Virus record (IMG/VR): IMGVR_UViG_3300046559_001153
Location: 62,001-126,000 of that record
Strand: one strand, 5' to 3'
Length of the DNA: 64,000 bases
Every line of letters begins with the position of its first letter. Position 1 is the first letter of the stretch. A model generated the notes under the pieces. It was given only the letters and a program-made list of their open reading frames with translations. It was not told the DNA's origin and did no database searches. Both the position numbers and the translations under genes were made by a program. Below, in pieces: positions 4,101-48,456 of the stretch.

Positions 4101-4397
4101 CTGTGCCATTATCGTGATAAGTCAGGTGATCCGGATATGTTCCGGGTCGTTTTGCAGGTGCATGACGCTGTGATTCTTGAAGTTCCGATTAGCAAGGTCG
4201 CCAGTGTTGCGCAGACTGTGATGCCGCTGTGCCTAGAAGAGCAGGTGCCGGTTTATCCGTGCACACTATCTGGCGATTCCACAGGCGACGGGCCTTACCG
4301 GTTCTCTGCAGTTACTGAGGTATTTGCCAGATGGGGTGAAAGGATAACCAAAGCAGACTGTCAAAAATACGGGTTACCCCTCGAACTGGGTGTTTAA
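1122..4397 (+). CDS. polA: Family A DNA polymerase with N-terminal uracil-DNA-glycosylase-like domain and 3'-5' exonuclease
   Basis: UDG-4-like RIMVIGKTPN..E...VGGPG and HPA; Exo I VDAEW, Exo III YGNYDAD; Pol motifs TGRWSSSDPPLQNI, ESDFTGAEL, RDIAKRIMFGMFYG, NVPIQG, LQVHDAVILEV. Confidence 0.93.
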   Translation: MADRVLISDLSASKDNTKKQLSKQAVAGLRVYPFTAPGMPKPGPSFVAAARQWVGEPDEPPHVLSKDQIVRRKEAYDKAVNEQLAQFYEDALYNPFDMPVGFRHKDPPFREARFGSSHFVPGSLWDTSNMGDRHNMPPGGYGPRRARIMVIGKTPNQDEVRHNRNLVGGPGSYLLEMLRQYGIDDMASWYVTSLVKFIPPRDKTALAAEWVQDCAPLLQMELRIVRPEIILCLGADAVKAVFGKGVKLAEVEGRDVPLTYNYHLSDSHYPLRHTAKVFSVVHPAFVMRTPAEGPRLAASLSRFSRMLAGEDLGQEEVDIDHRVIRTMDDLVLTLQDADDECTDGLIAVDAEWNGRHPQNRDAYVRTIQFSWAHGKAANIVVTDSTGGWCFDEPKEELIARLLDFFEDKRVVGHYLATDLEVLIHWGLDLRPQYAVPQDNRGDQLAWERTRNEGGANTAYMAHAIEETGKFGLDALSLRYTSAPAYWAELDQWKKAYCAKRKIKLKSLEGYGPCPDATLVPYGNYDADVTLRIYHKLNDLLDCDYQGNCCREAYWRSMSVEPAVIEINRTGLTLDMTRARVLAERFMKARDELEDRIRAWAKWPKLNLRSPLEVKEFLFGAKLNGKKSPTGGMVRLRPPEAKSLRLAPIFDTSKRPISWAEIEERRETDIYNPSTNKSNLQLLFYENEKYSEQIRWFRDFRFVDQVMKSVLQPKDRRYVNEDSVRDFKGGIPWAMCDDGRVRTHIWTTKETGRWSSSDPPLQNISKVRDDDYARILGAENYKNKIRSMFRATRASDPGAWVNEDCLLIESDFTGAELCMTAWMSGDAAMIEHVRRNALPENDPDYYDIHSNVAVLAFRLKCLPTKAGLKSLPGPTKDGKKYLRDIAKRIMFGMFYGRGAAAISREAREQGVDVSVDEAQGVMETIFDLYPNLRPFYAECKARASNPGWICTAFGSFRRVMPTRDQEVLSEFERQFMNVPIQGGVAYAMSQGITNLCHYRDKSGDPDMFRVVLQVHDAVILEVPISKVASVAQTVMPLCLEEQVPVYPCTLSGDSTGDGPYRFSAVTEVFARWGERITKADCQKYGLPLELGV

Positions 4398-20473: not shown

Positions 20474-22324
20474 ATGAAGGTCCGCGAAAAAGGAGTGAGG
20501 CGCGGGGGACGAAAAGGGAATCTGTTCGGCCAGACCGTCGAAGATATCGATAGTCTGGATCGGCTTAATGAAGAGTGGCGAACGGAGGACCGTTGTTTCA
20601 ATGCAGTGGGAGAGATGATCGCGTCTAACGACCCGGAGCGACACCACTGGAGCGGTGTCGGGATGGCCGTCGTTTTTGATCCGGCATTTCCGTTTATTCG
20701 TGCGATGGTTAAGACCGAGTCAGGCTATCAACGGCAGCCGATGGTGCACTCGGTGCTGGCTATTCCGGCCGGACGCGATGTGGCGTATTTCGGGCACAAT
20801 AAACGAGCTACTGTTCTGGCCAGGCGTCATTATTTGACTGTTTTCGACGGTCGTATTTGTTTGCAGAGCATCCTCGGACTAACACCAGAGGGGACGTACA
20901 ACACGTCCGACGAGGCGTTCTGGGATTTATCGAAGCCACCGACATCGATCCCCAGAAACGCAGTCATGGTGAAGGAGCGAGCTGCCTATGTTTCAGCGCC
21001 GTTCAGCGGGCATTACGCCGTTGTCCTTCGCGAGGATTTAGGCAAGTTCTTTGCGACGATCAAGGATCCCCACACCGGCCTGACCTGTGTGGTGGCTGAA
21101 ATTCCCTATGATCTACTCGACAAAGCTTTGACGGAGTCGGAACCTCACAATGATGGGGCTCCAGTCGCTGTTGGCGACAAGCTGATTGAGTTCGAAGGCG
21201 TGCAGACGTTTATGCAACTGCGCGATTCCACGTCACGTGTAACCCTGGAGAGCTATCTGTCGCGTCGTCCGATGATGCCACGCGACGTGTTAAATCCTGA
21301 AAAGCACAGTTTCGATCTTCGTATTTACACGACGTTGATGAATCGGCTGACCAGTGGATTGGTTGATCGTCTCAATCTTTTCAACAGTTTGCCGCGACGC
21401 TCAGAGGGTAGGCCGCAAGGGCGTCGTTTTGTGATGTGGCAAGACGAATACTTGTCGAGCCCAAACGCCCATCCCGGAGACTGGCTCCCCGAGGCGTACG
21501 TGTTTCACGAACGAGGGGCAGATCAAAGTGACGATGATTACTTTGTTTCTATCCTCAAAAAAATGAACCTCAGTTTCAAGGAAGAGCTCGAGCGACAGGT
21601 TCATGACTATTTCGGGGTTCCCGCACCGGTTGATGGCGAGATCCTCTCTGTGACACTGCGTCAGCCCGACGTGTTTGGCAAACAGGGCTATGACGTGGTG
21701 TTCGTGGGATGCGATGGTCACCGTCGCATTTATACGCTGCCGTGGACAGCCTCATTCCCGGTTCGTGGACTGGAGAGAGGTCCCAAGCTCGGTCCGATCA
21801 AGGCGAGAGAATTGATGGCTTACGCTTTGACGTTCGGTAGCACACGCATTCAGACGATGCGAAATGAGGAGCACCTGCTGCCGCTGTGCGACGGAAATAA
21901 AGACCTGGCTACCACCTTGTTATACCGGCTCGGTTTGTTGCTCGTGCAATGTCGATGCGAGCCGGCGTTCTGCGAGGAGATCTCTGGCGGAAAACCGGGT
22001 TTGATGCTTTCGGCGCGGTACCTTGAGTCGAAGGCGGGGCATCTGCCGAATGAACAATTCATTTGGTGGGACATGCGGCCGTTGCTGCCTTACTACCGAG
22101 GTGACCTGGGATGTGCCATCCTTCCCTGGATTAAACTGGGGTCAGTCGGCCATGTTTGGCGGACCATGGCCTTTACCTGCAACATGTGTAGATTGAACTT
22201 TATTCCCCATATTGGGAATAAAGTTGACGAGGATTTGATCGGTTTTCCGTTCGACCTGATTAAAGCCGGCCATTGCCGTCCACGATCAGGTGCACCAGTT
22301 TACGCAGTTGCGAAAGCAAGCTGA
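20474..22324 (+). CDS. Large hypothetical protein (616 aa)
   Basis: Long clean ORF with GAAAGG SD; no family recognised. Confidence 0.75.
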   Translation: MKVREKGVRRGGRKGNLFGQTVEDIDSLDRLNEEWRTEDRCFNAVGEMIASNDPERHHWSGVGMAVVFDPAFPFIRAMVKTESGYQRQPMVHSVLAIPAGRDVAYFGHNKRATVLARRHYLTVFDGRICLQSILGLTPEGTYNTSDEAFWDLSKPPTSIPRNAVMVKERAAYVSAPFSGHYAVVLREDLGKFFATIKDPHTGLTCVVAEIPYDLLDKALTESEPHNDGAPVAVGDKLIEFEGVQTFMQLRDSTSRVTLESYLSRRPMMPRDVLNPEKHSFDLRIYTTLMNRLTSGLVDRLNLFNSLPRRSEGRPQGRRFVMWQDEYLSSPNAHPGDWLPEAYVFHERGADQSDDDYFVSILKKMNLSFKEELERQVHDYFGVPAPVDGEILSVTLRQPDVFGKQGYDVVFVGCDGHRRIYTLPWTASFPVRGLERGPKLGPIKARELMAYALTFGSTRIQTMRNEEHLLPLCDGNKDLATTLLYRLGLLLVQCRCEPAFCEEISGGKPGLMLSARYLESKAGHLPNEQFIWWDMRPLLPYYRGDLGCAILPWIKLGSVGHVWRTMAFTCNMCRLNFIPHIGNKVDEDLIGFPFDLIKAGHCRPRSGAPVYAVAKAS

Positions 22325-22371
22325 CGACGCCCTTATGGGCGTAAGGCGAGACCCAAATTGAATGATCGATC

Positions 22372-22410
22372 ACGGTGGCGGCCAGGTGATCTGGCCGCCG
22401 CCGTTTCTTA
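22372..22410 (+). terminator. Strong hairpin/terminator
   Basis: 14-bp stem acggtggcggccag/ctggccgccgccgt then ttctta. Confidence 0.6.
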
Positions 22411-22492
22411 CGTTTTAGCCATTGGACAGGTACTGCCGTCTTCCATTCTTCTCTGGATTGCCGTATGCTGAGACCAAAGGAGACTACGAATT

Positions 22493-23662
22493 ATGCTCGA
22501 TGACAGTGCGGCATTACAGATGCTCGGTGGCGGCCCGGTCATGCAAACCCGCAAGGGCCTGCACGGCGTGAGTGTTCTGTCACCCGACCCGGATAAGCAC
22601 GTTCGCGTGGGTGGCGCCAGTGACATGGGCTTCATGGTCCCGATGGCCGATCTGATGACGGGCAGTCCGCCCGGTTTTGATCAGAGCAAGGCCGGCATGG
22701 TGGTGATTAACCCCGACGAATCAGGCAAAGGGACGTTGATCGATTTCAGCAAGTTGACCCCGGATGACGTGAATAGGGCTATGCGGATGGGATCCGATCC
22801 ATCAGATGCGATGGAGAAATTGGCCAAGCTGCATCCCCCACGATCCGCAGCGGTTGTCCAGCCCAGGCAGGTCCCCGTCGAACGTGTTATTTTGAATCAG
22901 TTGCCCCGGGTAGTCCAACATCCCCAAGCCATGCTTCCGCCGGCCAATCCGCCCTCGATCAATCCACCGCGGGTGATCTTGCCGGGTTTTGCCACTGTCG
23001 GGCAACCCCAACATATTCCCCAGGAACAGCCCATGCAAGCTCAGCCTCCGATGATGATGATGGCTCCCCCTGCGTCTCAGACTTGGACGTCGCCGGCTCC
23101 GTCTGTGGCCCAACCCGCGTTGCCCAATCCCAATGCCCCGATGTACCCGGCACAGCAGCCCGACGCCTTGTCGGTGATCATGCAGACTTTGATGGGAATG
23201 CAGCAACAAATCGACTCGCTGCGTCCTCAGCAGGTTCAGCCGTTTGTGCAGGAAGCTCGTCAGCCTGATTACACTCCCCTGGAGACTGAGGCCATTGCCG
23301 ACCTGAGTGCGCTGGAAATCCCCTGGTTGACACCCGTTGTCATGCCGCCAACCGTGGACGTCATGTTCAACCTGGGTGATGCGGGAGGCGTTCGTACCAA
23401 GTACCATCACGTCGAAATCACCGACGCATTGATCCTGTTGATCTACGATTCGCGGTTCGAAATGGCCACGCAGTATACGCCGCCGTTCACCAGAACCAGG
23501 GAAGCGGGACCCCTGATTTTGCAGATTGGCAAGTCAAAATCCCAACATCAGGCCCATCATTATCCCGGCCTCGATTTCGCTTTGGGTGTTTACCACGTAA
23601 CATTGTTGATGAAGGTGGTTCTCGAGCCCGAAGACCCGGTCGATCCGGCCAACGTCATTTAG
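22493..23662 (+). CDS. Hypothetical protein with central Pro/Gln-rich linker
   Basis: AAGGAG SD; low-complexity P/Q/A segment. Confidence 0.75.
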   Translation: MLDDSAALQMLGGGPVMQTRKGLHGVSVLSPDPDKHVRVGGASDMGFMVPMADLMTGSPPGFDQSKAGMVVINPDESGKGTLIDFSKLTPDDVNRAMRMGSDPSDAMEKLAKLHPPRSAAVVQPRQVPVERVILNQLPRVVQHPQAMLPPANPPSINPPRVILPGFATVGQPQHIPQEQPMQAQPPMMMMAPPASQTWTSPAPSVAQPALPNPNAPMYPAQQPDALSVIMQTLMGMQQQIDSLRPQQVQPFVQEARQPDYTPLETEAIADLSALEIPWLTPVVMPPTVDVMFNLGDAGGVRTKYHHVEITDALILLIYDSRFEMATQYTPPFTRTREAGPLILQIGKSKSQHQAHHYPGLDFALGVYHVTLLMKVVLEPEDPVDPANVI

Positions 23663-23849: not shown

Positions 23850-26735
23850 ATGATTGGTTCTCCGGTGCCCAGCGGTATGGGCGGTTACGGCGATCAGTTC
23901 CCTGATCCGTTTAACGACGTCGCGTCGATGAACATGCCATTGGGCATGCGATCGGCCTTGAGGACGTGCGAACGCATCTGGCTGGCATCCGGCTCGTACC
24001 GCATGGCCCAGCAGCGCATCTGCAGTTACTTCTTGACTGACATCCAGTTCAACGACTGCAGCGACGATGACCGATCTAAGTACACGGAGTTCGTCGAGGA
24101 CTTCGGTTTGCTGGAAGCCGAACAGCAGATGTACATCGATAGGGCGTGCTTCCATGGCGACGTGAAAGCCGTGACCAAGCACGGGGTTTTCAAACTTCGA
24201 GAGCTGGCTGGAAAGACTGTTGAAGTCCTGTCGCAAGGCGGCGAGTATCGACAAGCAACTTTCCAGTCGCACGGTCACCAGGCGTTATTGGAAGTGGCGT
24301 TTAGTGATGGTCGAACGATTTTGGCCACACCGGAACATGAGTGGACAGCTTTGAATTGTTCCGGCAAAAAGGTTGTCGTCCAGACAAAAGATCTGCACCA
24401 CGGGTATCGTATTCCTCGAGTTGTCGCCCCCCGACCAGAAAAAAATGAAGATTATTTTGAGGGGGTACGTCACGGTTTTGTTTTTGGTGATGGAACAGCC
24501 TACAACGATGAACGGCAGTCGGCCGCCATTTTTTATACGGCGAAAGACGACGAATTGATTCCCTATTTTGATGGCCACGGTGGGGAATTGAAACCGCGGC
24601 CATCTCGACCTGAACAGCGATATTTGCACGGTTTGCCCGGTCATTACAAGCAGCTGCCGTCTAACGATAAAAGCCCCAGCTACTGGTATGGTTTTGTTTG
24701 CGGATTTTTGGCCGCAGACGGCACTGTGGATACGTATGGTTGCGCCCTGTTGACGCAGATAGCCAAAGCGACTTTGGACGTAATTGTCGACCAGCTGCCC
24801 CGCATCGGGATGTGTGCTGGGCCAATTCGTGCTCAACGTCGAATTACCGACTTGAGAAAATACAGCGGCGAAAATGCCGTTTATGACAGCACAATTCACT
24901 TTGTCACGCTGTTGAAACGATTCATGCTGCCCCAGGATTTTCTGGTGACTAAGCACCGGATAAATTTCGAGGCGAATTTCAATTCGAAGTCGAATTATGG
25001 CAAGTACGTGCATATTAAGGCCATTCGTGAAACGGGTATCGTTGACGAGGTCTTTTGTTGTGCCGAAATGGAGACGCACACATTTGTCGTCGATCAGGCC
25101 ATTCTTACGAAGAATTGCTACGGAAATGCATTCGCTACGATCATGGTCCCGTTCAAGCGGATGCTGATGTGCCCGACAGCCAGTCGTGGATGTGGCAACC
25201 AGTACCCGTTGAAGGTCGTTTACAACGTCCCCAAATTCGCATTCAAATGGTCGCCATCGACCTGCGAATTTATCGCGACCTGCCCGCACTGCCAGTACCA
25301 CGGGCCATTCAAGGTCATCGATAATCCTGAGGACATGGAGAAACGCATCCGTGTAAAGACCTGGAATCCGCACGAGATCGAAATCCTGCACGACATGATG
25401 ACGGGCGATTGCGCCTACACATGGCGTATCCCCGAAGACTACAAGACTCAGATCCGTCGAGGAAACCTGTTCCATTTGGAACGTGTCTCCATGCCGGTTC
25501 TGCAGGCCATCAAAAAGAACCTGGTCTTTCGATTTCACGAGGATGTGCTCTTCCATATGAGGGAAGAGACGCCCAGCGGTATCCGTAACAGGGGCTGGGG
25601 AATTCCGCGGGCCCTGACGAACTTCCGTCAGGTGTACTACGTACAGGTGCTCAAACGGTACAACGAGGCCCTGGCCCTGGATTACATCATCCCCTTCCGG
25701 GTGATCACGCCGGTTGCCCGCCCGGGAGCGCTAGGCCCTGGCGCCCGAGCGTTGGATCCAATGGCCACAATGGACATGGGCGATTTCAGCTCCCAGGTCC
25801 GCAACATGATCCGCCGTCGACGACTCGACCCGGCCATGTGGTGCACGTTGCCATTCCCGATCCAGTATCAGGCCTTAGGCGGCGACGCGAGTCAGCTGGC
25901 GCCGAGCCAGTTGCTCGACCAAGGGCTCCAGCAGCTCCTGAATGACTCAGGGACGCCTCTCGAGCTGTACAACGGCTCTTTGACCGTCCAGACGGCCCCG
26001 GTGGCCCTGCGGCTGTTTGAGGCGACTAATACGCCCCTTGTACGGGCCGGCAATCAGTTCCTCAACTGGGCCATCAAGAAGGCCGCCCAGATCTTGCAGT
26101 GGGAACCTGTGAAGACCGCGAACAAGCGGGTCACCTACGCCGACGACGCATTGCGACAACAGTTGATCCTGCAGCTCATGACCGGGCAACAGGTCTCTCA
26201 GACGACCGGGCTCAGCGGTCTGGGTCTTGTCTTTACCGACGAGCAGAAGCGTCTGGCCGAAGAGGCCCGCGAGCAGGCCGATATCCGTACAAAGGTGCAA
26301 GACGAGATGGACGAAGCCGGTTTGTCCAAGGCCATGGTGCAGGGACCACAGGCTGGCGGGCAGCCTGGGGCGGCCGGTGGAGCAGCTCCTCCGGGTGGTG
26401 CGGCCCCTCCGGGCGGTGCTGGCGGTGCCAGTGCGTCTGGGCCTTCCCCGATCCCCGGGCAGTCAGACGCCATGCAGCCGGCAACAGCCTACTTGCAATC
26501 CAGGCCACCCGGCGGTCAGATCGACCTGCAAAGCTTCCAGCAGTCGGCCGATCAACTTGTTTCGGCCCTGGCGTCGCTACCTCACGAACAGCGGCAAAAG
26601 CAATTGCGAGAGCTGCGTGAGGGCGATCCGTCGATGCACCAGCTCGTCAGTGGTGGATTACAAAAAGCCAGACGTCAACAGAGCAGTCAGGGACAACAGG
26701 ATTCATCTCAGCAACCACCTCCCCAGGGGCAATGA
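23850..26735 (+). CDS. Probable portal protein, intein-containing precursor (about 638 aa after splicing)
   Basis: Spliced junction IDRA-CYGNAF matches portal 'GNAF/Y' motif; LFHMREE...RGWGIPRAL matches portal 'H.R...G.SP/GIP' motif; Cys insert and G/P/Q-rich tail. Confidence 0.65.
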   Translation: MIGSPVPSGMGGYGDQFPDPFNDVASMNMPLGMRSALRTCERIWLASGSYRMAQQRICSYFLTDIQFNDCSDDDRSKYTEFVEDFGLLEAEQQMYIDRACFHGDVKAVTKHGVFKLRELAGKTVEVLSQGGEYRQATFQSHGHQALLEVAFSDGRTILATPEHEWTALNCSGKKVVVQTKDLHHGYRIPRVVAPRPEKNEDYFEGVRHGFVFGDGTAYNDERQSAAIFYTAKDDELIPYFDGHGGELKPRPSRPEQRYLHGLPGHYKQLPSNDKSPSYWYGFVCGFLAADGTVDTYGCALLTQIAKATLDVIVDQLPRIGMCAGPIRAQRRITDLRKYSGENAVYDSTIHFVTLLKRFMLPQDFLVTKHRINFEANFNSKSNYGKYVHIKAIRETGIVDEVFCCAEMETHTFVVDQAILTKNCYGNAFATIMVPFKRMLMCPTASRGCGNQYPLKVVYNVPKFAFKWSPSTCEFIATCPHCQYHGPFKVIDNPEDMEKRIRVKTWNPHEIEILHDMMTGDCAYTWRIPEDYKTQIRRGNLFHLERVSMPVLQAIKKNLVFRFHEDVLFHMREETPSGIRNRGWGIPRALTNFRQVYYVQVLKRYNEALALDYIIPFRVITPVARPGALGPGARALDPMATMDMGDFSSQVRNMIRRRRLDPAMWCTLPFPIQYQALGGDASQLAPSQLLDQGLQQLLNDSGTPLELYNGSLTVQTAPVALRLFEATNTPLVRAGNQFLNWAIKKAAQILQWEPVKTANKRVTYADDALRQQLILQLMTGQQVSQTTGLSGLGLVFTDEQKRLAEEAREQADIRTKVQDEMDEAGLSKAMVQGPQAGGQPGAAGGAAPPGGAAPPGGAGGASASGPSPIPGQSDAMQPATAYLQSRPPGGQIDLQSFQQSADQLVSALASLPHEQRQKQLRELREGDPSMHQLVSGGLQKARRQQSSQGQQDSSQQPPPQGQ
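24147..25115 (+). mobile_element. Class 1 intein with LAGLIDADG homing endonuclease (323 aa)
   Basis: N-term CFHGD, block B ATPEH, LAGLIDADG helices HGFVFGDGT and CGFLAADGT, C-term THTFVVDQAILTKN followed by +1 Cys. Confidence 0.92.
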
Positions 26736-27487
26736 TGCCGAAAGTATTTCTGGTCGTACCATCATACGGCCACTACGACTACGTTTACGAAACTGTCCGG
26801 AGCGCATTCGAATGCACCCCGGACATTTCTGTTTGTATATTTGATGATGCGACGCCACCGGAGTTAGCACCCAGTCCTGAGTTTTGGGACAACTGGAATC
26901 AATTCGACCATACTCGAACAGGGTTTGTTACCTTTGACAAAAATGGCGGCCTTACGAGGTCTTGGAACGCCGGCTTACAGTTGGCAAGACAGGGCAAATT
27001 CGATTACGCGATCTGCGGCAATAGCGATCTGATCTTCTCACCCGGATGGTGGGAACCGATTCAGAAAGCGCTGGACGATGGCTGGGCCTTAGCTGGTCCT
27101 GTATCGAACGCCGCGGGAACTACCATCGGCTGTAGACAGGGCATTCTCAACTACCTGCCCGACTACAAAGTGTCAGATCAGACAAAAGACATTGAAGAGA
27201 CATCCGCTAGATTGAAAGCCAAAGGCGACCCGATCAATTCTCCGCTCAACGGATTTTGCCTGTGCGCCAAGACGGCTACCTGGTGGGACAATGCGTTTGA
27301 CGCTGATCACGTTTTCGATCCCCAGTACAAGATGACGCTCAACGAGGATCGTTTGCAGAAACGCTGGCGAGCGAAGGGTCTCAAATTCTGTGTCGTGCCC
27401 ACCAGTTTCGTTCTTCATTATCGATCGGTTACACGAGGGACCAGATATGTCCAAGGGCAGTGGTTGCGTAAAGGAGAAATATCGTGA
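26732..27487 (+). CDS. Glycosyltransferase family 2
   Basis: VVPSYG..DY..ETVRS, IFDDAT, NGGLTRSWNAG, GNSDL, GPVSN, FVLHYRS. Confidence 0.85.
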   Translation: MMPKVFLVVPSYGHYDYVYETVRSAFECTPDISVCIFDDATPPELAPSPEFWDNWNQFDHTRTGFVTFDKNGGLTRSWNAGLQLARQGKFDYAICGNSDLIFSPGWWEPIQKALDDGWALAGPVSNAAGTTIGCRQGILNYLPDYKVSDQTKDIEETSARLKAKGDPINSPLNGFCLCAKTATWWDNAFDADHVFDPQYKMTLNEDRLQKRWRAKGLKFCVVPTSFVLHYRSVTRGTRYVQGQWLRKGEIS

Positions 27488-27984
27488 GTGACGAGATTGA
27501 AGACAAATGTCCGCATTGTGGCGATTCATACAGCGAGATTCGTTCCTGCGATCCGTTAGCCGTATTTGAGTGTGGTTCAGAGACATGGCGTGGCACGTCA
27601 TCCAGGCAGACTGACTATTGTCGCATTCGCCAGCTCGAGCTGGCGATCAAACTTGTCTGCTCTCAGAAGGCCGACGACAAATGCTGGATGGATCTGAAGC
27701 CATTGGCCGAGATGGTCGGGGTCAAGCTCGACATGCACGTCGGTGACAAGGCGGCTATGCTTGAGAACTGCAACCGGTACGTGAACAACGTGTGCATAGC
27801 GGGCGGCCCCTGGCCCACGTATAGTGAGCTGGTATCGATGTTGTTCAAGTGCGGGCGCCACGCGCCAGATTGCCCGAGCAAGTCTTACGGCCCGGGCGAT
27901 GATCCGGATGAATCAAATTGTGACTGCGGTTGGGTCTCGATCCGCGACAAACTGTGGCCAGCAATAACTGAAAACAAGCAGTGA
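27484..27984 (+). CDS. Cys-rich hypothetical protein
   Basis: CPHC, CGS, CWMD, CDCGW; GTGA overlap. Confidence 0.6.
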   Translation: MSDEIEDKCPHCGDSYSEIRSCDPLAVFECGSETWRGTSSRQTDYCRIRQLELAIKLVCSQKADDKCWMDLKPLAEMVGVKLDMHVGDKAAMLENCNRYVNNVCIAGGPWPTYSELVSMLFKCGRHAPDCPSKSYGPGDDPDESNCDCGWVSIRDKLWPAITENKQ

Positions 27985-28658
27985 CGAGGGAGAGCATCAT
28001 GTCGCTGACCGTGTACACATGCATTCTCGGATCGATCGGCGACAAGCTCAGACCACCATCGTGCAAACTGCCTGGCATACATCTGGTCGCCTTTACTGAT
28101 CAGACAACGCCCGTCGATGGGTGGGAAATTCGTCGGCCGTTTCCGATGGCCGGATTGTCTCCGCGGCGTTTGGCTCGTTACCACAAGATCAACCCGCACA
28201 TCGTTCTGCCGCACCACGGTGACTCGATCTGGCTGGATGGGAGTTTTCAGCTGCGTGATTCGCCGATCGATTTTCTGTCGCATTTCCAAGAGGACATCGA
28301 GCTTGGTTGTTACAACCACACGGAACGCAGATGCGTTTACTCCGAATACCGCAGCTGTATCAGGCTTCGCAAAGACGACATCGGGCTGATGACCGCTCAG
28401 GTCGCCAGGTACCGCGAGGCGAAGTACCCGGAGAATGCCGGTCTGACAGAGACGGGCATCATTTACAGGAAGAACTGCCCGTCCGTGCAGTCGTTCAACA
28501 CGCTGTGGTGGGCTGAAGTAGCTAAGGGCAGCCACCGCGATCAGCTCTCGTTTGATTATTGTCTCTGGAAACAGTCGTGGGTCTGTCCATTGAAGGTTGT
28601 CCGTTTCCCTGGTTCTGTTTACTTGAATCCTTTAACCGCTTTCTACCGTCACCGTTAA
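27981..28658 (+). CDS. DUF616/TOD1-like glycosyltransferase domain protein
   Basis: VYTCI.G..D.L, AFTD, ARYHKINPH, SIWLDGS, H..R.CVY.E, ETG.I.R, RDQLSFDY. Confidence 0.8.
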   Translation: MTRESIMSLTVYTCILGSIGDKLRPPSCKLPGIHLVAFTDQTTPVDGWEIRRPFPMAGLSPRRLARYHKINPHIVLPHHGDSIWLDGSFQLRDSPIDFLSHFQEDIELGCYNHTERRCVYSEYRSCIRLRKDDIGLMTAQVARYREAKYPENAGLTETGIIYRKNCPSVQSFNTLWWAEVAKGSHRDQLSFDYCLWKQSWVCPLKVVRFPGSVYLNPLTAFYRHR

Positions 28659-28670
28659 TGAAAGGTTCTC

Positions 28671-29093
28671 ATGTCTGTTTATGACCAGATGATTGAAGAA
28701 GTGATCAAAATGCAACCGCTTCAAATGCAGAGCACATGGGCAGAATCACACAAGCGTCTGCATGGCGAGCTTTTCGCGTATTGCTCGCCTGGGCGAGGAT
28801 TTATGTCGTGTAGACCAGATAATAAAGTGTGCGGTTGTCTCACCCAGATCAGAGCTAGCCATTGGTTTGAAGACCCACCACGTAAGTTCGCGTGGACGGA
28901 CGAACTGACGAAGCTGATTGCCGAAGATGATCGTCTGCCGTCTGATATGGGTGACTTGGTAAGGAAATGGCCTGGCATGTCGGCCGATGAACGCCGAGCC
29001 ACGCTCATTCCTTTGGCCGAATGGCAAGAACGTCTGGATAAAGAACTCAATCGCACTACTCCGGTCTTCGGCCAGTTCAATAATCCGCATTAA
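28671..29093 (+). CDS. Hypothetical protein, paralog family A member 1
   Basis: CGCLT and AEWQERLDKE motifs shared with 29106, 44371, 48070. Confidence 0.75.
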   Translation: MSVYDQMIEEVIKMQPLQMQSTWAESHKRLHGELFAYCSPGRGFMSCRPDNKVCGCLTQIRASHWFEDPPRKFAWTDELTKLIAEDDRLPSDMGDLVRKWPGMSADERRATLIPLAEWQERLDKELNRTTPVFGQFNNPH

Positions 29094-29105
29094 CGAAAGG
29101 ATCTC

Positions 29106-29516
29106 ATGTCTGTTTACGACCAGATGATTGACGCAGTGATCAATATGCCCGCTCGCGAGGTCCAACGACTTTGGGGCAGTGGCTACAACGAGGGGGCTGG
29201 GTATCTCTTCAGTTACTGCTCCCCCGGCCGAGACGATGAGGACTGTTCTTTCGCTGGGGACTGTTCTTTCGAAAGGGCGTTCTGCGGTTGCCTGACCCAG
29301 GTCAAAGCATACGACGCAGTGGCTTACACAGAGGAATTAACGCGAGAGATCCGCGCTGATTGGCGCTTGCCAACAAGCATGGTCACGTTTTTACTGGGTT
29401 GGGACAAGTTGGTGCCGGACGAACGACGGACAAAGATGCAGCCGTTTGCTGAATGGCAAGAACGTCTGGATAAAGAGTTCAATCGTCCGACTCCGGTCTT
29501 CCAACTGGCCGAATAG
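29106..29516 (+). CDS. Hypothetical protein, paralog family A member 2 (tandem duplicate)
   Basis: Near-identical nucleotide 5' and 3' ends to 28671 gene. Confidence 0.75.
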   Translation: MSVYDQMIDAVINMPAREVQRLWGSGYNEGAGYLFSYCSPGRDDEDCSFAGDCSFERAFCGCLTQVKAYDAVAYTEELTREIRADWRLPTSMVTFLLGWDKLVPDERRTKMQPFAEWQERLDKEFNRPTPVFQLAE

Positions 29517-29533
29517 CCCCTTATCATGCGATC

Positions 29534-30574
29534 ATGGCAATCGGGCTGTACGTATCATACCGCCAGTCAGAACAGTGCTTCGCCGCGATTCAGCTGGCCG
29601 AGCTGCTTACCTCATTTGGCTCCCAGGTTGTAATTTACTCGCCCCAGTCCCCGCAAGCCGTTGGCTCAAGCTGGGACCGGGGCGTGTTGTCGCCCAAGAA
29701 ACTCCCATTTGAGACGGTGATGGGAGCCTTCGACTGGTGGATCTGGTTTGAACACATTCCTCCGCATTTAGAATTGATCTGCGATAAATCGAGGAACACG
29801 CTTGTTCCATCGTGGCACAAGCTGACAGCCAAGCACGAGTCGTCCATGAATCTCTACTCAGAGATTGTGGCACCGACGCTGGCGGTCAAGCGGGCTCTCG
29901 ATCAGAAGGAATTCACTTTGCCCGTGCATTGTGTTCCGTGGGATGCCCCGGGCGAGATACAAGCCATTCACCCAAAGCCGGCTGGCTATTACTGCCGGAT
30001 GCCCGAGCGTTTTACCGCTAAAGATACCATTCGGTTGGCCGTGATCGATCATTTGCTGGCGGAAGGATATCCAGTCACACTGGTCAAACCGATAACCACT
30101 TTGCCGCAGAACATTCTCAAAATCTTCGATAAGTGGTCGAAACTCCACAAGCAATTTACGCTGTTGCCTGCGTCAACCGTCTTGGATCACCTGGCCAGGA
30201 TGGCTAAATGCAGGTGGTCAGTTATTCTCGATTCGGCCGACAACCTCGGATATGCGTGTCTTGAATCTCTCTCGCTCGGGATGCCTGTCATTTGTTACGA
30301 TATCCCGCCGAGAGATGAGTACTTGAAACAGGGCCAAAACAGCATTCTGCTCGACTGCAATCTCGAGCTCAGCTATCTGGGCGCCCCTCGAGCGATCGTT
30401 GTGGCTGACCCTAACGCCGAAGAGTTGAGGGACTCCCTTTGGACCTCAACCCGAACAAGAATGCAGTCGATCATCAACCAGTCATTGTCAGGATTTAAGG
30501 ACACGCCGGATATCCTGATCGCACGACGAGAGGGCTTCAAGGCTCACTGGGAGCACTTGGCCAGATCTACTTAA
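29534..30574 (+). CDS. GT-B fold (family 4-like) glycosyltransferase
   Basis: DNLGYACLESLSLGMPVICYDIP..DEYLKQGQNSILL matches the E-x7-E GT4 signature region. Confidence 0.75.
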   Translation: MAIGLYVSYRQSEQCFAAIQLAELLTSFGSQVVIYSPQSPQAVGSSWDRGVLSPKKLPFETVMGAFDWWIWFEHIPPHLELICDKSRNTLVPSWHKLTAKHESSMNLYSEIVAPTLAVKRALDQKEFTLPVHCVPWDAPGEIQAIHPKPAGYYCRMPERFTAKDTIRLAVIDHLLAEGYPVTLVKPITTLPQNILKIFDKWSKLHKQFTLLPASTVLDHLARMAKCRWSVILDSADNLGYACLESLSLGMPVICYDIPPRDEYLKQGQNSILLDCNLELSYLGAPRAIVVADPNAEELRDSLWTSTRTRMQSIINQSLSGFKDTPDILIARREGFKAHWEHLARST

Positions 30575-30587
30575 TCGAAAGGCAATC

Positions 30588-30929
30588 ATGGCCACAACAC
30601 TCGTGTCTCACTTGGTCAATAAATTCTTGTTGTCTGATCCTCCAACTGATCCCGTCGTGTTGGCAATAATGCAGAGATTCGAGCTGTTTGCTCAACAGTA
30701 CGTGGACGACCTGCAGAGCGTGATGACTCAGATGGAAGTTCCGGGGACTGGTTTGCGACTGGATGACGGAAACGAACCAGTCACGGTCCAGATTCGTACG
30801 AAGGCTCGTGACTCGGTCCAGGGCACGATGAACGAGGGGGCCCATCAGGCCGTTCTCGGAAGGTCCATGTCAGGCAAGCAAGTCATTCAGGCGTTCGGCG
30901 TCGAAGATCCGTTGGCTCCAGGGGGTTGA
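30588..30929 (+). CDS. Hypothetical protein
   Basis: GAAAGG SD, ORF in array. Confidence 0.65.
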   Translation: MATTLVSHLVNKFLLSDPPTDPVVLAIMQRFELFAQQYVDDLQSVMTQMEVPGTGLRLDDGNEPVTVQIRTKARDSVQGTMNEGAHQAVLGRSMSGKQVIQAFGVEDPLAPGG

Positions 30930-31552
30930 TCATGTCGGAGATCTCTGAAGGACAGCTCAAGCTTCTGTACGCCAGGATCTTCGATCTTTACTGCGAAGAG
31001 AATGAAGTATCGACGTCCGAGCGTGAAGACGTCGACGGGGCAAAGTTTGTCAGATGGCTCTTGTCCGAGTCGTTTGGGCTCCCATTGATCGACCGTCTCA
31101 GGGCCATGGAGGGCCCTGAGATTTTAGAATCAGTCTGGGATACGGTAATGGCCGCATTGGCCTCACCTGATGCACCGTTGTACTTCTTCCACTTGTTCCC
31201 GTATCTGAGTCTCGGGCACCGCAAGTGCGAGCCGCCGGTAATCGGCGTCGAGATGAACCTGGCTATCAAGTTTGCCGATGGCTTGGTAATTCGCCATCCG
31301 CCGATCGGTATTGCCAGTGAATCAGCCAGCGACAGGACTTGCGGAGACGGCCATCTGGGTATGGCGTTCCACAAGATGGCCAACGCGCTGGTCAAATGGA
31401 TTCGAACAAATTCGCTGCAGCAGCTGCATGATCAAGCCGCAGCTGTGATTGAGCAGCGAAGATCGGCGACAACATCCAGCACGGATGACGAAGCTGGCAG
31501 AAACCAGCTCATTCGACTGGCTCAACAACCTTTACAGGGGGGATTCGCATGA
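30926..31552 (+). CDS. Hypothetical protein
   Basis: Coupled ORF. Confidence 0.65.
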   Translation: MIMSEISEGQLKLLYARIFDLYCEENEVSTSEREDVDGAKFVRWLLSESFGLPLIDRLRAMEGPEILESVWDTVMAALASPDAPLYFFHLFPYLSLGHRKCEPPVIGVEMNLAIKFADGLVIRHPPIGIASESASDRTCGDGHLGMAFHKMANALVKWIRTNSLQQLHDQAAAVIEQRRSATTSSTDDEAGRNQLIRLAQQPLQGGFA

Positions 31553-32526
31553 GTACCGAACGACGCGCGGGACGAACTGATTTTGGCCTATTGGTTCTTG
31601 CTGCTGGCTTTTTGACTATTGGCGTGGGTTTCGCCGTTCTGCTCTCCAAGAGCGTTACCAGCTGGGAATCGAGCAGAGCAAAAACTCAAATCGCATCGTC
31701 GAGCCACACAGAGGAGTTGGCACCAATCACGGTAGACCTTAATCCGGTCGCTATCCTGCCCGACGAGCCGGTCTATCAGATTACCGCGGCCAGGCCGCCT
31801 CAAGAGGATCCGTTCCTCAAGTACACGCCAACCGAGGATTACTTTGTTCGACCGTTTGGATTGACGGCCTACAACGGAATGACTCGCTGCCCGTTGTGGG
31901 TTCTCGAGCGGCTGACTAAGAAGCACCTGGCCGGTAAGGCCAAACGGATCGGGTTGGATTTCTTTGCCGACCAGGAGATCCCGATTGAATTTCGAGCTCA
32001 CCCCCAGTCGTACGCTGGACAGGGCGAAGACAAAGGCCACGCAGCCAGTGCGGCCAATCACGAGCACGACATGGAAGAAATGAAGTCGACGTTTACCATG
32101 ATCAACTGCATGCCGCAGACGCCCGAGTGCAACCGACTTATCGTGCTGCAGGGTGAGGACATGGCCAGGGAGTTTGCCGAGATCGACGATAATACGATTG
32201 TCTACAGAACGACGGCGCCGTGCTGGTTGCCTGAGATGGTCTCCCGTAAAGACGGCCTGGTGAAATCGCATTACGAATTCAAAGCCATCGGTGCCGATCG
32301 AATATGGGTGCCCACGCATATAGCCTTCTCGCTGTACATTGTTAAGATCGGTGGGAGTGTAACGATGCGGGGATGGTTGGTCCCCAACCTGGAGAAGTAC
32401 CCCGAAAAAGCCACTTTCGACACGTACAAGAAGGACGTCGACTTTCTGGAGATGAGCACTGGGCTCAATTTTTGGAAGGGTCTCGACCAGCCGTTGCAGG
32501 ATCACCTGGAAAAAGAAACCCACTAA
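31549..32526 (+). CDS. DNA/RNA non-specific endonuclease (NucA/Serratia family) with N-terminal membrane anchor
   Basis: YN..TRCPLWV.E.L, DKGH (DRGH motif), STF.MINCMPQ...CNR, WVPTH; hydrophobic helix residues about 12-32. Confidence 0.85.
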   Translation: MSTERRAGRTDFGLLVLAAGFLTIGVGFAVLLSKSVTSWESSRAKTQIASSSHTEELAPITVDLNPVAILPDEPVYQITAARPPQEDPFLKYTPTEDYFVRPFGLTAYNGMTRCPLWVLERLTKKHLAGKAKRIGLDFFADQEIPIEFRAHPQSYAGQGEDKGHAASAANHEHDMEEMKSTFTMINCMPQTPECNRLIVLQGEDMAREFAEIDDNTIVYRTTAPCWLPEMVSRKDGLVKSHYEFKAIGADRIWVPTHIAFSLYIVKIGGSVTMRGWLVPNLEKYPEKATFDTYKKDVDFLEMSTGLNFWKGLDQPLQDHLEKETH

Positions 32527-32550
32527 TCTCTTTTCGCAAGGACGCGAATC

Positions 32551-33123
32551 ATGAAGTACTTCGTTCGTTTTTTCTGGACCATTGTCGTAATGGGGATAGT
32601 CATCATTGCGGTCAACATCGTCTACAACACATTCTCCGATCAGACCGTTCACGCTCAGGTGATGAAACGGTTTGAACCGAAGATGGCCCCGAGTGACACC
32701 GTTGAAATGGACGAAGTACCGGCCGACAGAGTTCAGCAGGACGCTGAACAGGCCATGGCTATCAGGGTCGACCGACGTATTCGAATGCCCACGCATACAG
32801 ATATCGAGCTCTATTTGAGCTTCGGTGTTTTGCTGTTCGGGTTCTTCGTCATGCTCGGTCAATTTGCCATCATGATTCGTGAGCGTCGTTACTTCGACAA
32901 CATGTCGTTGAAGATGCTCACGATCACGATGGCCGTCACCAGTGCCCTGTTTTTAATAACGGCCGGGTTCAGCTCCGATCAGATCCAGCCGGCAATCGGC
33001 CTGATCAGTGGAACACTAGGTTTCGCGTTCGGTCTCCGCGGTGACACACCGGCTGACGCATCACAGAACTCGACACCCCGTCCGACACCCACGCCGCCGA
33101 TACCCCCGTCAATCAAACCATGA
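32551..33123 (+). CDS. Integral membrane protein
   Basis: About four hydrophobic segments; Pro-rich tail. Confidence 0.7.
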   Translation: MKYFVRFFWTIVVMGIVIIAVNIVYNTFSDQTVHAQVMKRFEPKMAPSDTVEMDEVPADRVQQDAEQAMAIRVDRRIRMPTHTDIELYLSFGVLLFGFFVMLGQFAIMIRERRYFDNMSLKMLTITMAVTSALFLITAGFSSDQIQPAIGLISGTLGFAFGLRGDTPADASQNSTPRPTPTPPIPPSIKP

Positions 33124-44370: not shown

Positions 44371-44745
44371 ATGAAGACTAAATCAAAATCCGACCTCTAC
44401 GACGCGGCCATTGAGCGGCTGATACGGATGCCGTGGAATGACGTGCAACAGCGGTGGGTGTGGGGCGCGGCTGAACATCCCGACGATGAGTCGAGACTGT
44501 TCGCTATGTGCGGGCCGCAGCTGTCAGGTTGTGGGTGTCCCACTATGGTACGGAGCGGGATGCCCGCGTCTACCCGCGAACTCACTAAGTCTATCCACCG
44601 CATGAGGAGCATCCCTGAATGCATCCTAGAACTCGAACTCCTCTGGGAGAAGGGCGTCTCGCTCGCCAGGCGACGGGCTGCGTTGCGGGGTTTTGCACGG
44701 GCGCAGAGGCTGGTCGACAAGGTCACGGGGCGTACCTGGAAGTAA
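44371..44745 (+). CDS. Hypothetical protein, paralog family A member 3 (divergent)
   Basis: LYDAAIERL...W...LF..C...CGCPTMVR...ELT..I...RR..L..FA..QR..DK. Confidence 0.7.
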   Translation: MKTKSKSDLYDAAIERLIRMPWNDVQQRWVWGAAEHPDDESRLFAMCGPQLSGCGCPTMVRSGMPASTRELTKSIHRMRSIPECILELELLWEKGVSLARRRAALRGFARAQRLVDKVTGRTWK

Positions 44746-48069: not shown

Positions 48070-48456
48070 ATGAGTGAACTTGACAAGTATGACCTGGAAA
48101 TCGAGAGGCTGATAAACCTGCCTGGATCCAGCACTGAGGCCGCGTGGCTCGACGGAGCGCTGTTGTTTCAGTTCGCGAGTCCCTCAGGTGATGTGGGCCA
48201 GTGTCCGAATGGTCAGAAGTGCGGTTGTCTGACGATGATCCGGAATGCAGCCAATAGTGCGAGTAAATTTGCTGCATGGACGCACAGTTTGACTATGGAA
48301 ATAGCCAGTGACGAACGCATCCCGTTGTCGGTGACCAACCTGATTGATGGGTGGTCTGTGTTGAGTCCGGACCAACGCAGGGACAAGCTGCAGCCCTTCG
48401 CCGAATGGCAACGTCGTCTGGACAAGGAGATTCGCAATGAGCGAGCCAGTGTTTAA
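48070..48456 (+). CDS. Hypothetical protein, paralog family A member 4
   Basis: CGCLTMIR...AWT..LT.EI..DERIP...QPFAEWQRRLDKE. Confidence 0.75.
   Translation: MSELDKYDLEIERLINLPGSSTEAAWLDGALLFQFASPSGDVGQCPNGQKCGCLTMIRNAANSASKFAAWTHSLTMEIASDERIPLSVTNLIDGWSVLSPDQRRDKLQPFAEWQRRLDKEIRNERASV

What the first reader, a model, noticed from the sequence alone, without database searches (positions are those of the whole stretch)
26732..30574. Three different glycosyltransferases translationally linked to the portal gene
GT2 (ATGA-overlap with portal stop), a DUF616/TOD1-like GT and a GT4-like enzyme form one run with the portal. Co-expression with a head gene suggests a virion-glycosylation pathway (known mainly from giant and archaeal viruses and a few phages) or late host-surface remodelling.
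Basis: partly seen in the sequence, partly recalled or inferred. Interest (0 to 1): 0.6.

Follow-up and report, generated by a model that had tools for sequence, protein, structure and literature searches.

The report
Portal-linked glycosyltransferase cassette of a jumbo phage
A 224-kb soil phage carries three sugar-adding enzymes directly behind its portal (head-entry) gene, an arrangement shared by almost all its uncultured relatives, so the enzymes probably decorate a phage-made target such as the virus particle, but this was not shown.

Summary
The window is part of a 224,270-bp phage genome with terminal repeats, found in soil and rhizosphere metagenomes.

- **Gene run.** The portal gene (23850-26735, interrupted by a 323-aa intein) overlaps by ATGA a soluble GT2 enzyme. 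Behind it, with gaps of -4 to +17 nt, lie a Cys-rich 166-aa ORF, a DUF616/TOD1 enzyme, two paralogous small ORFs and a GT-B (GT4-like) protein.
- **Conservation.** Starting from the portal, 57 of 60 related viral contigs carry at least one of these three enzymes within 6 kb downstream. The order portal-GT2-DUF616-GT-B is the most common (27 of 60).
- **Relatives.** No isolated phage in the collection searched has a homologue of the GT2 or the GT-B.
- **DNA glycosylation.** It is unsupported: the genome has no hydroxymethylase, TET or C5-methylase.
- **Acceptor.** It remains unknown. Core status across phages binned with different host phyla favours a phage-encoded target, most likely virion glycosylation (about 0.45).
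- **Rival.** The GT2's bacterial homologues sit in polysaccharide clusters, and the conserved block also holds non-head genes. Host-surface remodelling stays a serious rival (about 0.3).
- **Context.** The genome holds at least seven further glycosyltransferase domains elsewhere.

The parts
23850..26735 (+). Portal protein gene (961 aa precursor; 638 aa after splicing)
   Evidence: tblastn to the annotated portal of Salmonella phage Arash (E 1e-38). Orthologues of 629-658 aa are 44-50% identical. 78 homologous loci were found in IMG/VR.
24147..25115 (+). Intein inside the portal (aa 100-422) with two LAGLIDADG-like motifs
   Evidence: It is an insertion relative to intein-free orthologues, with Cys1, a terminal Asn and Cys+1. 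Pfam Intein_splicing gives E 2.5e-4, below the cut-off. It is 33% identical to the intein region of a phage ribonucleotide reductase (E 5e-48).
26732..27487 (+). GT2-family GT-A glycosyltransferase, soluble, with ATGA overlap to the portal stop
   Evidence: PF00535 scores 42.7 bits. The junction is shown. Invariant D38 D39, N97-x-D99, N173-G-F, E205 and H229 in 21 homologues. AF2 pLDDT 92.9, and Z 16-18 to GT-A enzymes. No transmembrane segment.
27484..27984 (+). Cys-rich (13 Cys) 166-aa ORF of unknown function; GTGA overlap with the GT2 stop
   Evidence: No Pfam, PHROG or NCBIfam hit. 25 partial homologues without annotation. Absent from the relatives' cassettes.
27981..28658 (+). DUF616/TOD1-MUCI70-like glycosyltransferase (likely start ATG 27999)
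   Evidence: PF04765 scores 61.9 bits; phrog_26101 'glycosyltransferase' gives E 3e-15. Invariant T33-D34, W78-x-D80, H107, E116, K125-D126, E151 and R180-D-Q in 6 orthologues. Present at the same position in 34 of 60 relatives.
28671..29093 (+). Small protein, paralogue A (140 aa), unknown function
   Evidence: 46% identical to the next ORF. Four copies in the genome. 221 representative clusters in the large library, none annotated.
29106..29516 (+). Small protein, paralogue B (136 aa), unknown function
29534..30574 (+). GT-B fold, GT4-like glycosyltransferase homologue (346 aa)
   Evidence: PF00534 scores 24.5 bits, below the cut-off. AF2 pLDDT 77. Foldseek probability 1.0 to PimA 2gej, chlorovirus 3oy2 and BshA, TM 0.6-0.69. 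Viral GT1/GT4 matches. It is the most widely kept of the three enzymes behind the portal (53 of 60).
30588..33123 (+). Continuation of the tight gene run: 113-aa and 208-aa ORFs, a membrane-anchored Endonuclease_NS (31549-32526) and a multi-pass membrane protein (32551-33123)
   Evidence: Gaps of -4 to +24 nt. PF01223 gives E 2e-27. Transmembrane-like windows.

Best explanation
The region is a clade-wide, portal-linked glycosylation cassette of an uncultured group of large phages of about 170-235 kb. Many relatives encode a tubulin.

Shown:
- Three cytoplasmic, soluble, Leloir-type enzymes (a GT2 GT-A, a DUF616 GT-A and a GT4-like GT-B) lie in one tightly packed same-strand run that starts inside the portal's stop codon.
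- The GT2 and DUF616 keep their acidic nucleotide- and metal-binding motifs.

Inferred:
- The run is transcribed and translated with the portal, late in infection.
- The enzymes act in sequence to build a short glycan on a phage-encoded acceptor made at the time of particle assembly, most likely a virion protein.
- The accessory DUF616 and the fast-evolving GT-B vary the glycan between lineages.
- The Cys-rich ORF and the two small paralogues are later insertions, not parts of the pathway.
For: - Tight coupling: ATGA and GTGA overlaps, gaps of 17 nt or less, SD-like sequences, and no terminator-like or promoter-like site above background inside the run.
- Intact enzymes: invariant catalytic-type residues in the GT2 and DUF616, and confident GT-A and GT-B models.
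- Core status from the GT2 side: 10 of 10 contigs plus 4 MAG contigs show portal-GT2-(DUF616)-GT-B.
- Core status from the portal side: 57 of 60 loci carry at least one of the enzymes downstream, and the full three-enzyme order is the mode at 27 of 60.
- Relatives are binned with several host phyla (Planctomycetota, Acidobacteriota, Actinomycetota, Myxococcota). This fits a phage-encoded acceptor better than a host-specific one.
- No transmembrane segments, unlike seroconversion Gtr enzymes.
- DNA-base glycosylation lacks its prerequisites in this genome.
- Precedent: mycobacteriophage capsid and tail-tube glycosylation by phage-encoded glycosyltransferases, as summarised in PMC12619734.
Against: - No glycan, proteome or RNA data exist; no RNA run holds the phage.
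- The conserved block also contains non-head genes (methyltransferase, tubulin). The capsid candidate is about 104 kb away and has no low-complexity C-terminal tail like the mycobacteriophage acceptors.
- Bacterial members of the same GT2 family lie in polysaccharide clusters. In Singulisphaera they are flanked by a GT4 and a pyruvyl transferase, and they nest within the phage sequences in the tree.
- GT-A fold matches are tied between protein- and glycan-acting enzymes.
- The GT-B of this phage falls below the Pfam cut-off, and the usual EX7E glutamates are not conserved in the orthologues. It may not be catalytic.
- Host assignments from MAG binning are weak.
Confidence: 0.45

Rival explanations
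1. Host-envelope glycan remodelling. The soluble enzymes act at the inner face of the membrane on lipid-linked oligosaccharides or polysaccharide precursors of the host. They would change its surface late in infection, for example to block superinfection or to stop progeny from sticking to debris, together with the phage's second, larger glycan cluster.
For: - Bacterial homologues of the GT2 sit in polysaccharide gene clusters (GT4 - GT2 - pyruvyl transferase in Singulisphaera acidiphila; GT2-methyltransferase fusions). The tree shows exchange between phage and Planctomycetota.
- The genome holds a sporadic-type cluster at 148.5-160 kb with three GT2, a GT47, a GT11, an epimerase/dehydratase and three FkbM methyltransferases. 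It also holds a GT9 domain and heptose-activation genes.
- Iyer et al. 2021 read such jumbo-phage clusters as capsular polysaccharide modification against superinfection (PMC7824862).
Against: - Host-surface genes in phages are usually sporadic. This cassette is core and syntenic in 57 of 60 relatives, which appear to span several host phyla.
- There is no flippase, polymerase, Gtr-type membrane partner or transmembrane segment in the run.
Confidence: 0.3
2. Another or no catalytic role. The enzymes glycosylate a non-virion phage protein or a small molecule or lipid, or the GT-B is a non-catalytic assembly or scaffolding factor that merely keeps a GT-B fold.
For: - The GT-B is the most widely kept gene behind the portal (53 of 60) but evolves fast (16-28% identity, against 45-50% for the portal).
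- It lacks conserved EX7E glutamates and is below the Pfam cut-off in this phage.
- Its closest solved folds include small-molecule and lipid glycosyltransferases (BshA, PimA).
Against: - The GT2 and DUF616 keep catalytic-type motifs under clear purifying selection.
- GT-B orthologues in relatives pass the Pfam GT1 models.
- Residues W47-D48 and H95 are invariant, which suggests an active site.
Confidence: 0.2
3. DNA glycosylation. The enzymes add sugars to hydroxymethylated bases of the phage genome, as T-even phages do, protecting it from restriction.
For: - T4 alpha- and beta-glucosyltransferases are GT-B enzymes.
- Two viral 'DNA alpha-GT' models appear low in the viral fold list (ranks 19 and 45, TM 0.43-0.49).
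- Nucleotide-metabolism genes (ThyX, dCMP deaminase, NT5C, a PurA/PurZ-like protein) are present.
Against: - The genome has no ThyA-type hydroxymethylase, no TET/JBP dioxygenase and no C5-cytosine methyltransferase, while the controls rang.
- The GT-B resembles GT4 enzymes more than DNA glucosyltransferases.
- Linkage to a late gene fits poorly with modification during replication.
Confidence: 0.05

Closest known systems
Mycobacteriophage virion glycosylation (Freeman et al. 2023, as summarised in PMC12619734 and PMC11256854)
   Same: Phage-encoded soluble glycosyltransferases, here placed beside a structural gene. The proposed role is decoration of virion proteins.
   Different: - No sequence homologue of the GT2 or GT-B was found in any of 50,697 deposited phage records.
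- The capsid candidate here lacks a low-complexity C-terminal acceptor tail.
- Here the enzymes are core and portal-linked across a clade.
- Glycans on virions were not shown.
Glycan gene clusters of jumbo cyanophages, read as 'capsular polysaccharide modification systems' (Iyer et al. 2021, PMC7824862)
   Same: Several glycosyltransferase families together with sugar-nucleotide enzymes in a large phage. This phage's second cluster at 148.5-160 kb looks like this type. A DUF616 homologue occurs in Synechococcus phage S-SCSM1.
   Different: Those clusters are sporadic and polymorphic between related phages. The portal-linked cassette is conserved in position and content in 57 of 60 relatives.
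Giant-virus glycosylation machinery (chlorovirus and mimivirus glycosyltransferases)
   Same: An autonomous set of many glycosyltransferases plus FkbM-type methyltransferases and sugar-nucleotide enzymes. The GT-B model matches chlorovirus NY2A B736L (3oy2) and mimivirus-group glycosyltransferases at fold level.
   Different: The resemblance is at fold level only (11-15% identity). This is a tailed phage of bacteria. No glycan structure is known.
T4-type DNA glucosyltransferases and temperate-phage Gtr seroconversion systems
   Same: Phage-encoded glycosyltransferases of GT-B fold (T4) or GT2 type (GtrB).
   Different: There is no hydroxymethylase or TET for a DNA acceptor. There are no GtrA, GtrB or GtrC membrane proteins and no transmembrane segments.

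Membership tests
GT2 (Pfam PF00535, GT-A fold) | Domain match above the curated cut-off | tested here: met
   42.7 bits against a cut-off of 23.3.
GT2 (Pfam PF00535, GT-A fold) | GT-A fold with an N-terminal nucleotide-binding Asp pair, a DxD-type metal site and a downstream acidic or His residue | tested here: met
   pLDDT 92.9. Z 16-18 to WrtF, GalNAc-T1, K4CP, TarP and SpsA. Invariant D38 D39, N97-S-D99, E205 and H229. The first residue of the DxD is Asn.
GT2 (Pfam PF00535, GT-A fold) | Sugar transfer from a nucleotide sugar | not testable with these tools
   Needs an enzyme assay.
DUF616 / TOD1-MUCI70 (PF04765) | Domain match above the cut-off | tested here: met
   61.9 bits against a cut-off of 21.4, but only profile positions 142-300 of 314 are covered. 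phrog_26101 gives E 3e-15.
DUF616 / TOD1-MUCI70 (PF04765) | Conserved acidic motifs consistent with a GT-A active site | tested here: inconclusive
   Invariant T33-D34, W78-x-D80, E116, D126, E151 and D181 in 6 orthologues. No fold or assay was done.
GT4 (Pfam Glycos_transf_1, retaining GT-B) | Domain match above the cut-off | tested here: not met
   24.5 bits against a cut-off of 26.4 for this protein. Several orthologues do carry precomputed PF00534 or PF13692 hits.
GT4 (Pfam Glycos_transf_1, retaining GT-B) | GT-B two-Rossmann fold closest to GT4 members | tested here: met
   Foldseek probability 1.0. PimA 2gej, BshA 5d01 (TM 0.69) and chlorovirus 3oy2.
GT4 (Pfam Glycos_transf_1, retaining GT-B) | EX7E motif | tested here: not met
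   This protein has D-x7-E at that place. Most orthologues have Arg in place of the second Glu. It is filed as GT4-like, not as GT4.
Phage portal protein | Homology to established portals and conserved single-copy status | tested here: met
   Arash portal E 1e-38. 78 homologous viral loci. There is no Pfam or PHROG profile hit, so this is a divergent family.
Intein (class 1, with LAGLIDADG endonuclease) | Insertion relative to intein-free orthologues, Cys/Ser at position 1, terminal Asn, nucleophile at +1 | tested here: met
   aa 100-422; Cys1, Asn422 and Cys423; the spliced length of 638 aa equals that of the orthologues. The penultimate residue is Lys rather than His. Splicing was not tested.
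Virion-glycosylation system | Glycans on virion proteins that depend on phage glycosyltransferases | not testable with these tools
   There is no isolate, proteome or RNA run.
DNA hypermodification by glycosylation | An enzyme that creates the hydroxymethyl acceptor (ThyA-like hydroxymethylase, or TET with a C5 methyltransferase) | tested here: not met
   PF00303, PF12851 and PF00145 are absent from the complete genome, while the controls rang.
Gtr-type seroconversion | Membrane-bound GtrA, GtrB and GtrC | tested here: not met
   No transmembrane-like window in any of the six proteins.

The most novel reading that the evidence does not exclude
An undescribed, widespread clade of large soil and freshwater phages, probably infecting Planctomycetota and other phyla, carries a core portal-linked three-enzyme cassette. 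The cassette glycosylates the virion, and its glycan is diversified by gain and loss of the GT2 and DUF616 and by rapid change of the GT-B. Together with at least seven further glycosyltransferase domains, methyltransferases and sugar-nucleotide enzymes, this would be a giant-virus-like, host-independent glycosylation system in a tailed phage.
Probability: 0.35. Interest if true: 0.7.

Novelty: new variant of a known kind. Interest (0 to 1): 0.5.

Why it matters
Phage-encoded glycosyltransferases are usually accessory genes for DNA protection or host serotype change. Virion glycosylation has been shown only in a few actinobacteriophages.

Here the enzymes form a core cassette fixed behind the portal gene in 57 of 60 relatives, and the GT2 and GT-B have no homologue in any deposited phage record searched. 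That points to a glycan that matters for making or protecting the particle in a large, uncultured phage group of soils and waters.

If confirmed, it would widen virion glycosylation from a curiosity to a lineage-defining trait. It would also give three new enzyme families with a defined genetic context.

Tried and rejected
- Megablast of 12 kb against deposited phages found no match.
- A single-sequence portal scan of viral contigs found nothing. The alignment-based scan then worked.
- The sigma-70 promoter and terminator scan gave fewer sites than the shuffles and nothing inside the run. A 9-mer search of intergenic regions found no phage promoter motif.
- NCBIfam gave nothing useful for the run.
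- The Atlas search for the 140-aa paralogue gave no usable hit. The function of the paralogues and of the Cys-rich ORF stays unknown.
- The weak HNH_2 hit in the GT2 C-terminus (E 0.0017) is rejected. That stretch is conserved in all GT2 homologues.
- Foldseek ranked polypeptide GalNAc-transferases first for the GT2, which would have favoured protein O-glycosylation. The exhaustive structural ranking shows them tied with polysaccharide and teichoic-acid enzymes, so no acceptor is inferred.
- DNA glycosylation is rejected as the main reading.
- The moraphage lineage (PMC12619734) was considered as the phage's identity and set aside. It is T4-like and no tubulin is reported.
- The portal C-terminal Gly/Ala/Pro/Gln-rich tail is conserved in relatives but poor in Ser/Thr, so it is not proposed as the acceptor.
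- No complex prediction was sent, because binding between these proteins is not claimed.
- One search failed on a mistyped reference. PMC10527164 is not held.
- Read laying was given 5,401 letters. No alternative genetic code was used.
Full report
**What the window is.** The 64-kb window is positions 62001-126000 of a 224,270-bp virus record with direct terminal repeats. Nearly all genes lie on the + strand. There is no nucleotide match among 50,697 deposited phage records. Identical DNA occurs in many soil and rhizosphere metagenomes. Contigs from four runs other than the likely source match without a single difference and bridge the portal/GT2 junction. The arrangement is therefore not an assembly artefact.

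**The portal.**
- The 961-aa ORF at 23850-26735 has no Pfam or PHROG portal hit.
- Its residues 425-828 match the annotated portal of Salmonella phage Arash at 26% identity, E 1e-38.
- Residues 55-445 match intein-bearing ribonucleotide reductases of other phages.
- Alignment with intein-free orthologues of 629-658 aa places an intein at aa 100-422 (DNA 24147-25115). It has Cys1, a terminal Asn, Cys+1 and two LAGLIDADG-like motifs. The spliced portal would be 638 aa.

**The gene run.**

| Coordinates | Product | Junction with the gene before |
|---|---|---|
| 26732-27487 | GT2 | ATGA overlap with the portal stop |
| 27484-27984 | Cys-rich 166-aa ORF | GTGA overlap |
| 27999-28658 | DUF616 (likely ATG start behind GAGGGAGAG) | gap 14 nt |
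| 28671-29093 | small paralogue A | gap 12 nt |
| 29106-29516 | small paralogue B, 46% identical to A | gap 12 nt |
| 29534-30574 | 346-aa GT-B protein | gap 17 nt |

- The run continues without a real gap to 33123.
- None of the six proteins has a transmembrane-like segment.
- No promoter-like or terminator-like site above background interrupts the run.

**The enzymes.**
- GT2: PF00535 at 42.7 bits. In 21 homologues D38 D39, N97-x-D99, N173-G-F, E205 and H229 are invariant. The model is confident (pLDDT 92.9) and is a generic GT-A. Z is 18.3 to the WrtF fucosyltransferase, 18.2 to GalNAc-T1, and 16-17 to K4CP, TarP and SpsA. The fold says nothing about the acceptor, although Foldseek listed polypeptide GalNAc-transferases first.
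- DUF616: PF04765 at 61.9 bits, with invariant acidic motifs in six orthologues.
- GT-B: it falls just below the Pfam cut-off (24.5 against 26.4 bits). Its model (pLDDT 77) matches GT4 enzymes PimA and BshA and a chlorovirus glycosyltransferase with probability 1.0 and TM up to 0.69. It also matches viral GT1/GT4 proteins. The EX7E glutamates are not conserved among orthologues, while W47-D48 and H95 are invariant. I file it as GT4-like by fold, with catalytic competence open.

**Conservation, from the GT2 side.**
- The GT2 has about 100 homologues at 34-49% identity.
- All ten contigs looked up show the same order: a variable 350-680-aa gene, a 315-530-aa gene, a small ORF, the portal, GT2, sometimes DUF616, a GT-B of about 350 aa, and usually a tubulin.
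- Four MAG contigs show the same order.

**Conservation, from the portal side.** The GT2-side sample is biased, so I repeated the test starting from the portal.
- A portal alignment found 78 IMG/VR loci.
- Of the 60 loci with at least 2.5 kb downstream, 57 carry at least one of the three enzymes within 6 kb.
- Counts: GT-B 53, GT2 40, DUF616 34, tubulin 35.
- Orders: portal-GT2-DUF616-GT-B, with or without tubulin, is the mode at 27 loci. GT2-GT-B-tubulin occurs in 11 and GT-B alone in 12. The three loci without any enzyme include the two most divergent portals in the set, at 30% and 34% identity.
- The three-enzyme layout of this window is therefore the typical state of a clade, not a peculiarity.
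- The Cys-rich ORF and the two paralogues are absent from relatives. The paralogue family has four scattered copies in this genome. These three ORFs look like insertions.

**Relatives outside the clade.**
- Neither the GT2 nor the GT-B has a tblastn match in the deposited phage collection.
- DUF616 homologues occur in Synechococcus phage S-SCSM1 and in Cellulophaga phages.
- The GT2 family also occurs in bacterial chromosomes without a portal. In Singulisphaera acidiphila it lies between a GT4 and a polysaccharide pyruvyl transferase. Elsewhere it is fused to methyltransferases.
- In a maximum-likelihood tree the Singulisphaera genes nest inside a phage subclade (support 95/94). Phage and cellular labels need at least three changes. 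This indicates exchange between these phages and Planctomycetota.

**Genome context.** A survey of the whole genome found much more glycan machinery.
- A cluster at 148.5-160 kb holds three GT2, an epimerase/dehydratase, three FkbM methyltransferases, a GT47-like, a GT11-like and another methyltransferase.
- A GT9 domain lies in a 693-aa protein at 24.7-26.8 kb.
- Heptose kinase/adenylyltransferase-type genes are present.
- GT2-like domains lie at 195.8 and 199.4 kb.
- The capsid candidate (phrog_2522, E 5e-8) lies at 192.6-193.5 kb, about 104 kb from the portal. It has no low-complexity C-terminal tail.
- The genome lacks a ThyA-type hydroxymethylase, TET/JBP and a C5 methyltransferase, while the control genomes rang.
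- Unlike most relatives it lacks a tubulin.

**Interpretation.**
- Shown: a tightly coupled, conserved portal-linked cassette of soluble glycosyltransferases.
- Inferred: late co-expression with the portal and sequential building of a short glycan.
- The acceptor is not known.
- For a phage-encoded acceptor such as a virion protein:
  - the cassette is core and syntenic in a clade whose members are binned with several host phyla;
  - there are no membrane partners;
  - the prerequisites for DNA glycosylation are absent.
- Against it:
  - the conserved block is functionally mixed;
  - the GT2's cellular kin make surface polysaccharides;
  - there are no expression or glycan data.
- My estimates are 0.45 for virion glycosylation, 0.3 for host-envelope remodelling, 0.2 for another acceptor or a non-catalytic GT-B, and 0.05 for DNA glycosylation.

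**Comparison with known systems.**
- Mycobacteriophage virion glycosylation is the nearest functional analogue (PMC12619734; PMC11256854), but no sequence homologue of the GT2 or GT-B was found in the deposited phage collection.
- The second cluster resembles the sporadic glycan clusters of jumbo cyanophages, read as capsule modification (PMC7824862).
- Full-text searches found no description of a portal-linked glycosyltransferase cassette or of this clade.

**Verdict.** This is a new variant of a known kind, of moderate interest.

Noticed in passing
window 24147-25115 (inside the portal gene); L004:6889-9999; L023:7084-9987: The portal is interrupted by a 323-aa LAGLIDADG intein. Relatives carry portal inteins at at least two different sites: L004 after about residue 47, and this phage and L023 after about residue 99. 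A second Hint/LAGLIDADG protein exists elsewhere in the genome.
   Followed up: partly
genome 148,500-160,000 (L017:8543-19994): A second, larger glycan cluster: three GT2, an epimerase/GDP-mannose-dehydratase-like enzyme, three FkbM methyltransferases, a GT47-like, a GT11-like (fucosyltransferase family), NT5C, a Methyltransf_24 and an AAA ATPase.
   Followed up: partly
genome 24,745-26,826 (L011:4745-6823); genes within genome 1-63 kb and 125-176 kb: A GT9 (heptosyltransferase) domain in a 693-aa protein. Also cytidylyltransferase-like and PfkB kinase genes and a PHROG hit to the bifunctional heptose kinase/adenylyltransferase. The phage may make its own activated heptose.
   Followed up: partly
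genome 130,136-131,356 (L016:10136-11353): An adenylosuccinate-synthetase homologue (PF00709, E 6e-41). PurZ of 2-aminoadenine (Z-genome) phages belongs to this family. Whether this is PurA-like or PurZ-like was not resolved.
   Followed up: partly
window 1122-4397: A 1,091-aa DNA polymerase A with an N-terminal uracil-DNA-glycosylase-superfamily domain and a 3'-5' exonuclease domain.
   Followed up: no
window 31549-33123: An Endonuclease_NS (E 2e-27) with an N-terminal hydrophobic anchor, followed by a multi-pass membrane protein with a Pro/Thr-rich C-terminal tail. Both sit in the same tight run as the glycosyltransferases.
   Followed up: no
window 28671-29093, 29106-29516, about 44395-44736, about 48079-48432: A four-copy family of small proteins of 110-150 aa. 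It has 221 representative clusters in the large protein library and no annotation.
   Followed up: partly
window 30574-31552 compared with L004-L009, L022 and L023 just downstream of the GT-B: Most relatives encode a tubulin (PhuZ/TubZ-like) right after the cassette, often followed by DUF6445. This genome has neither, although it has multisubunit RNA polymerase genes (Rpb2_6, Rpb1_2).
   Followed up: yes
L031:4582-8247 (Singulisphaera acidiphila NC_019892); L024: A chromosomal GT2 of the phage family lies between a GT4 and a polysaccharide pyruvyl transferase. It nests within a phage subclade in the tree. This suggests gene exchange and Planctomycetota as hosts of the clade. L007 also encodes a planctomycete-type PF07596 protein.
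   Followed up: partly
window 20474-23662: The gene two positions upstream of the portal (616 aa here) is hypervariable in length (350-680 aa), and the copy in this phage has no detectable similarity to its positional counterparts in the relatives compared. The next gene (389 aa) has a long Pro/Gln/Ala/Met-rich centre and a conserved C-terminal domain. Both are of unknown function.
   Followed up: partly
window 25900-26735 and the portal C-termini of L004-L009, L022 and L023: All portals of the clade end in a Gly/Ala/Pro/Gln-rich linker, a conserved helical segment and a second low-complexity tail.
   Followed up: partly
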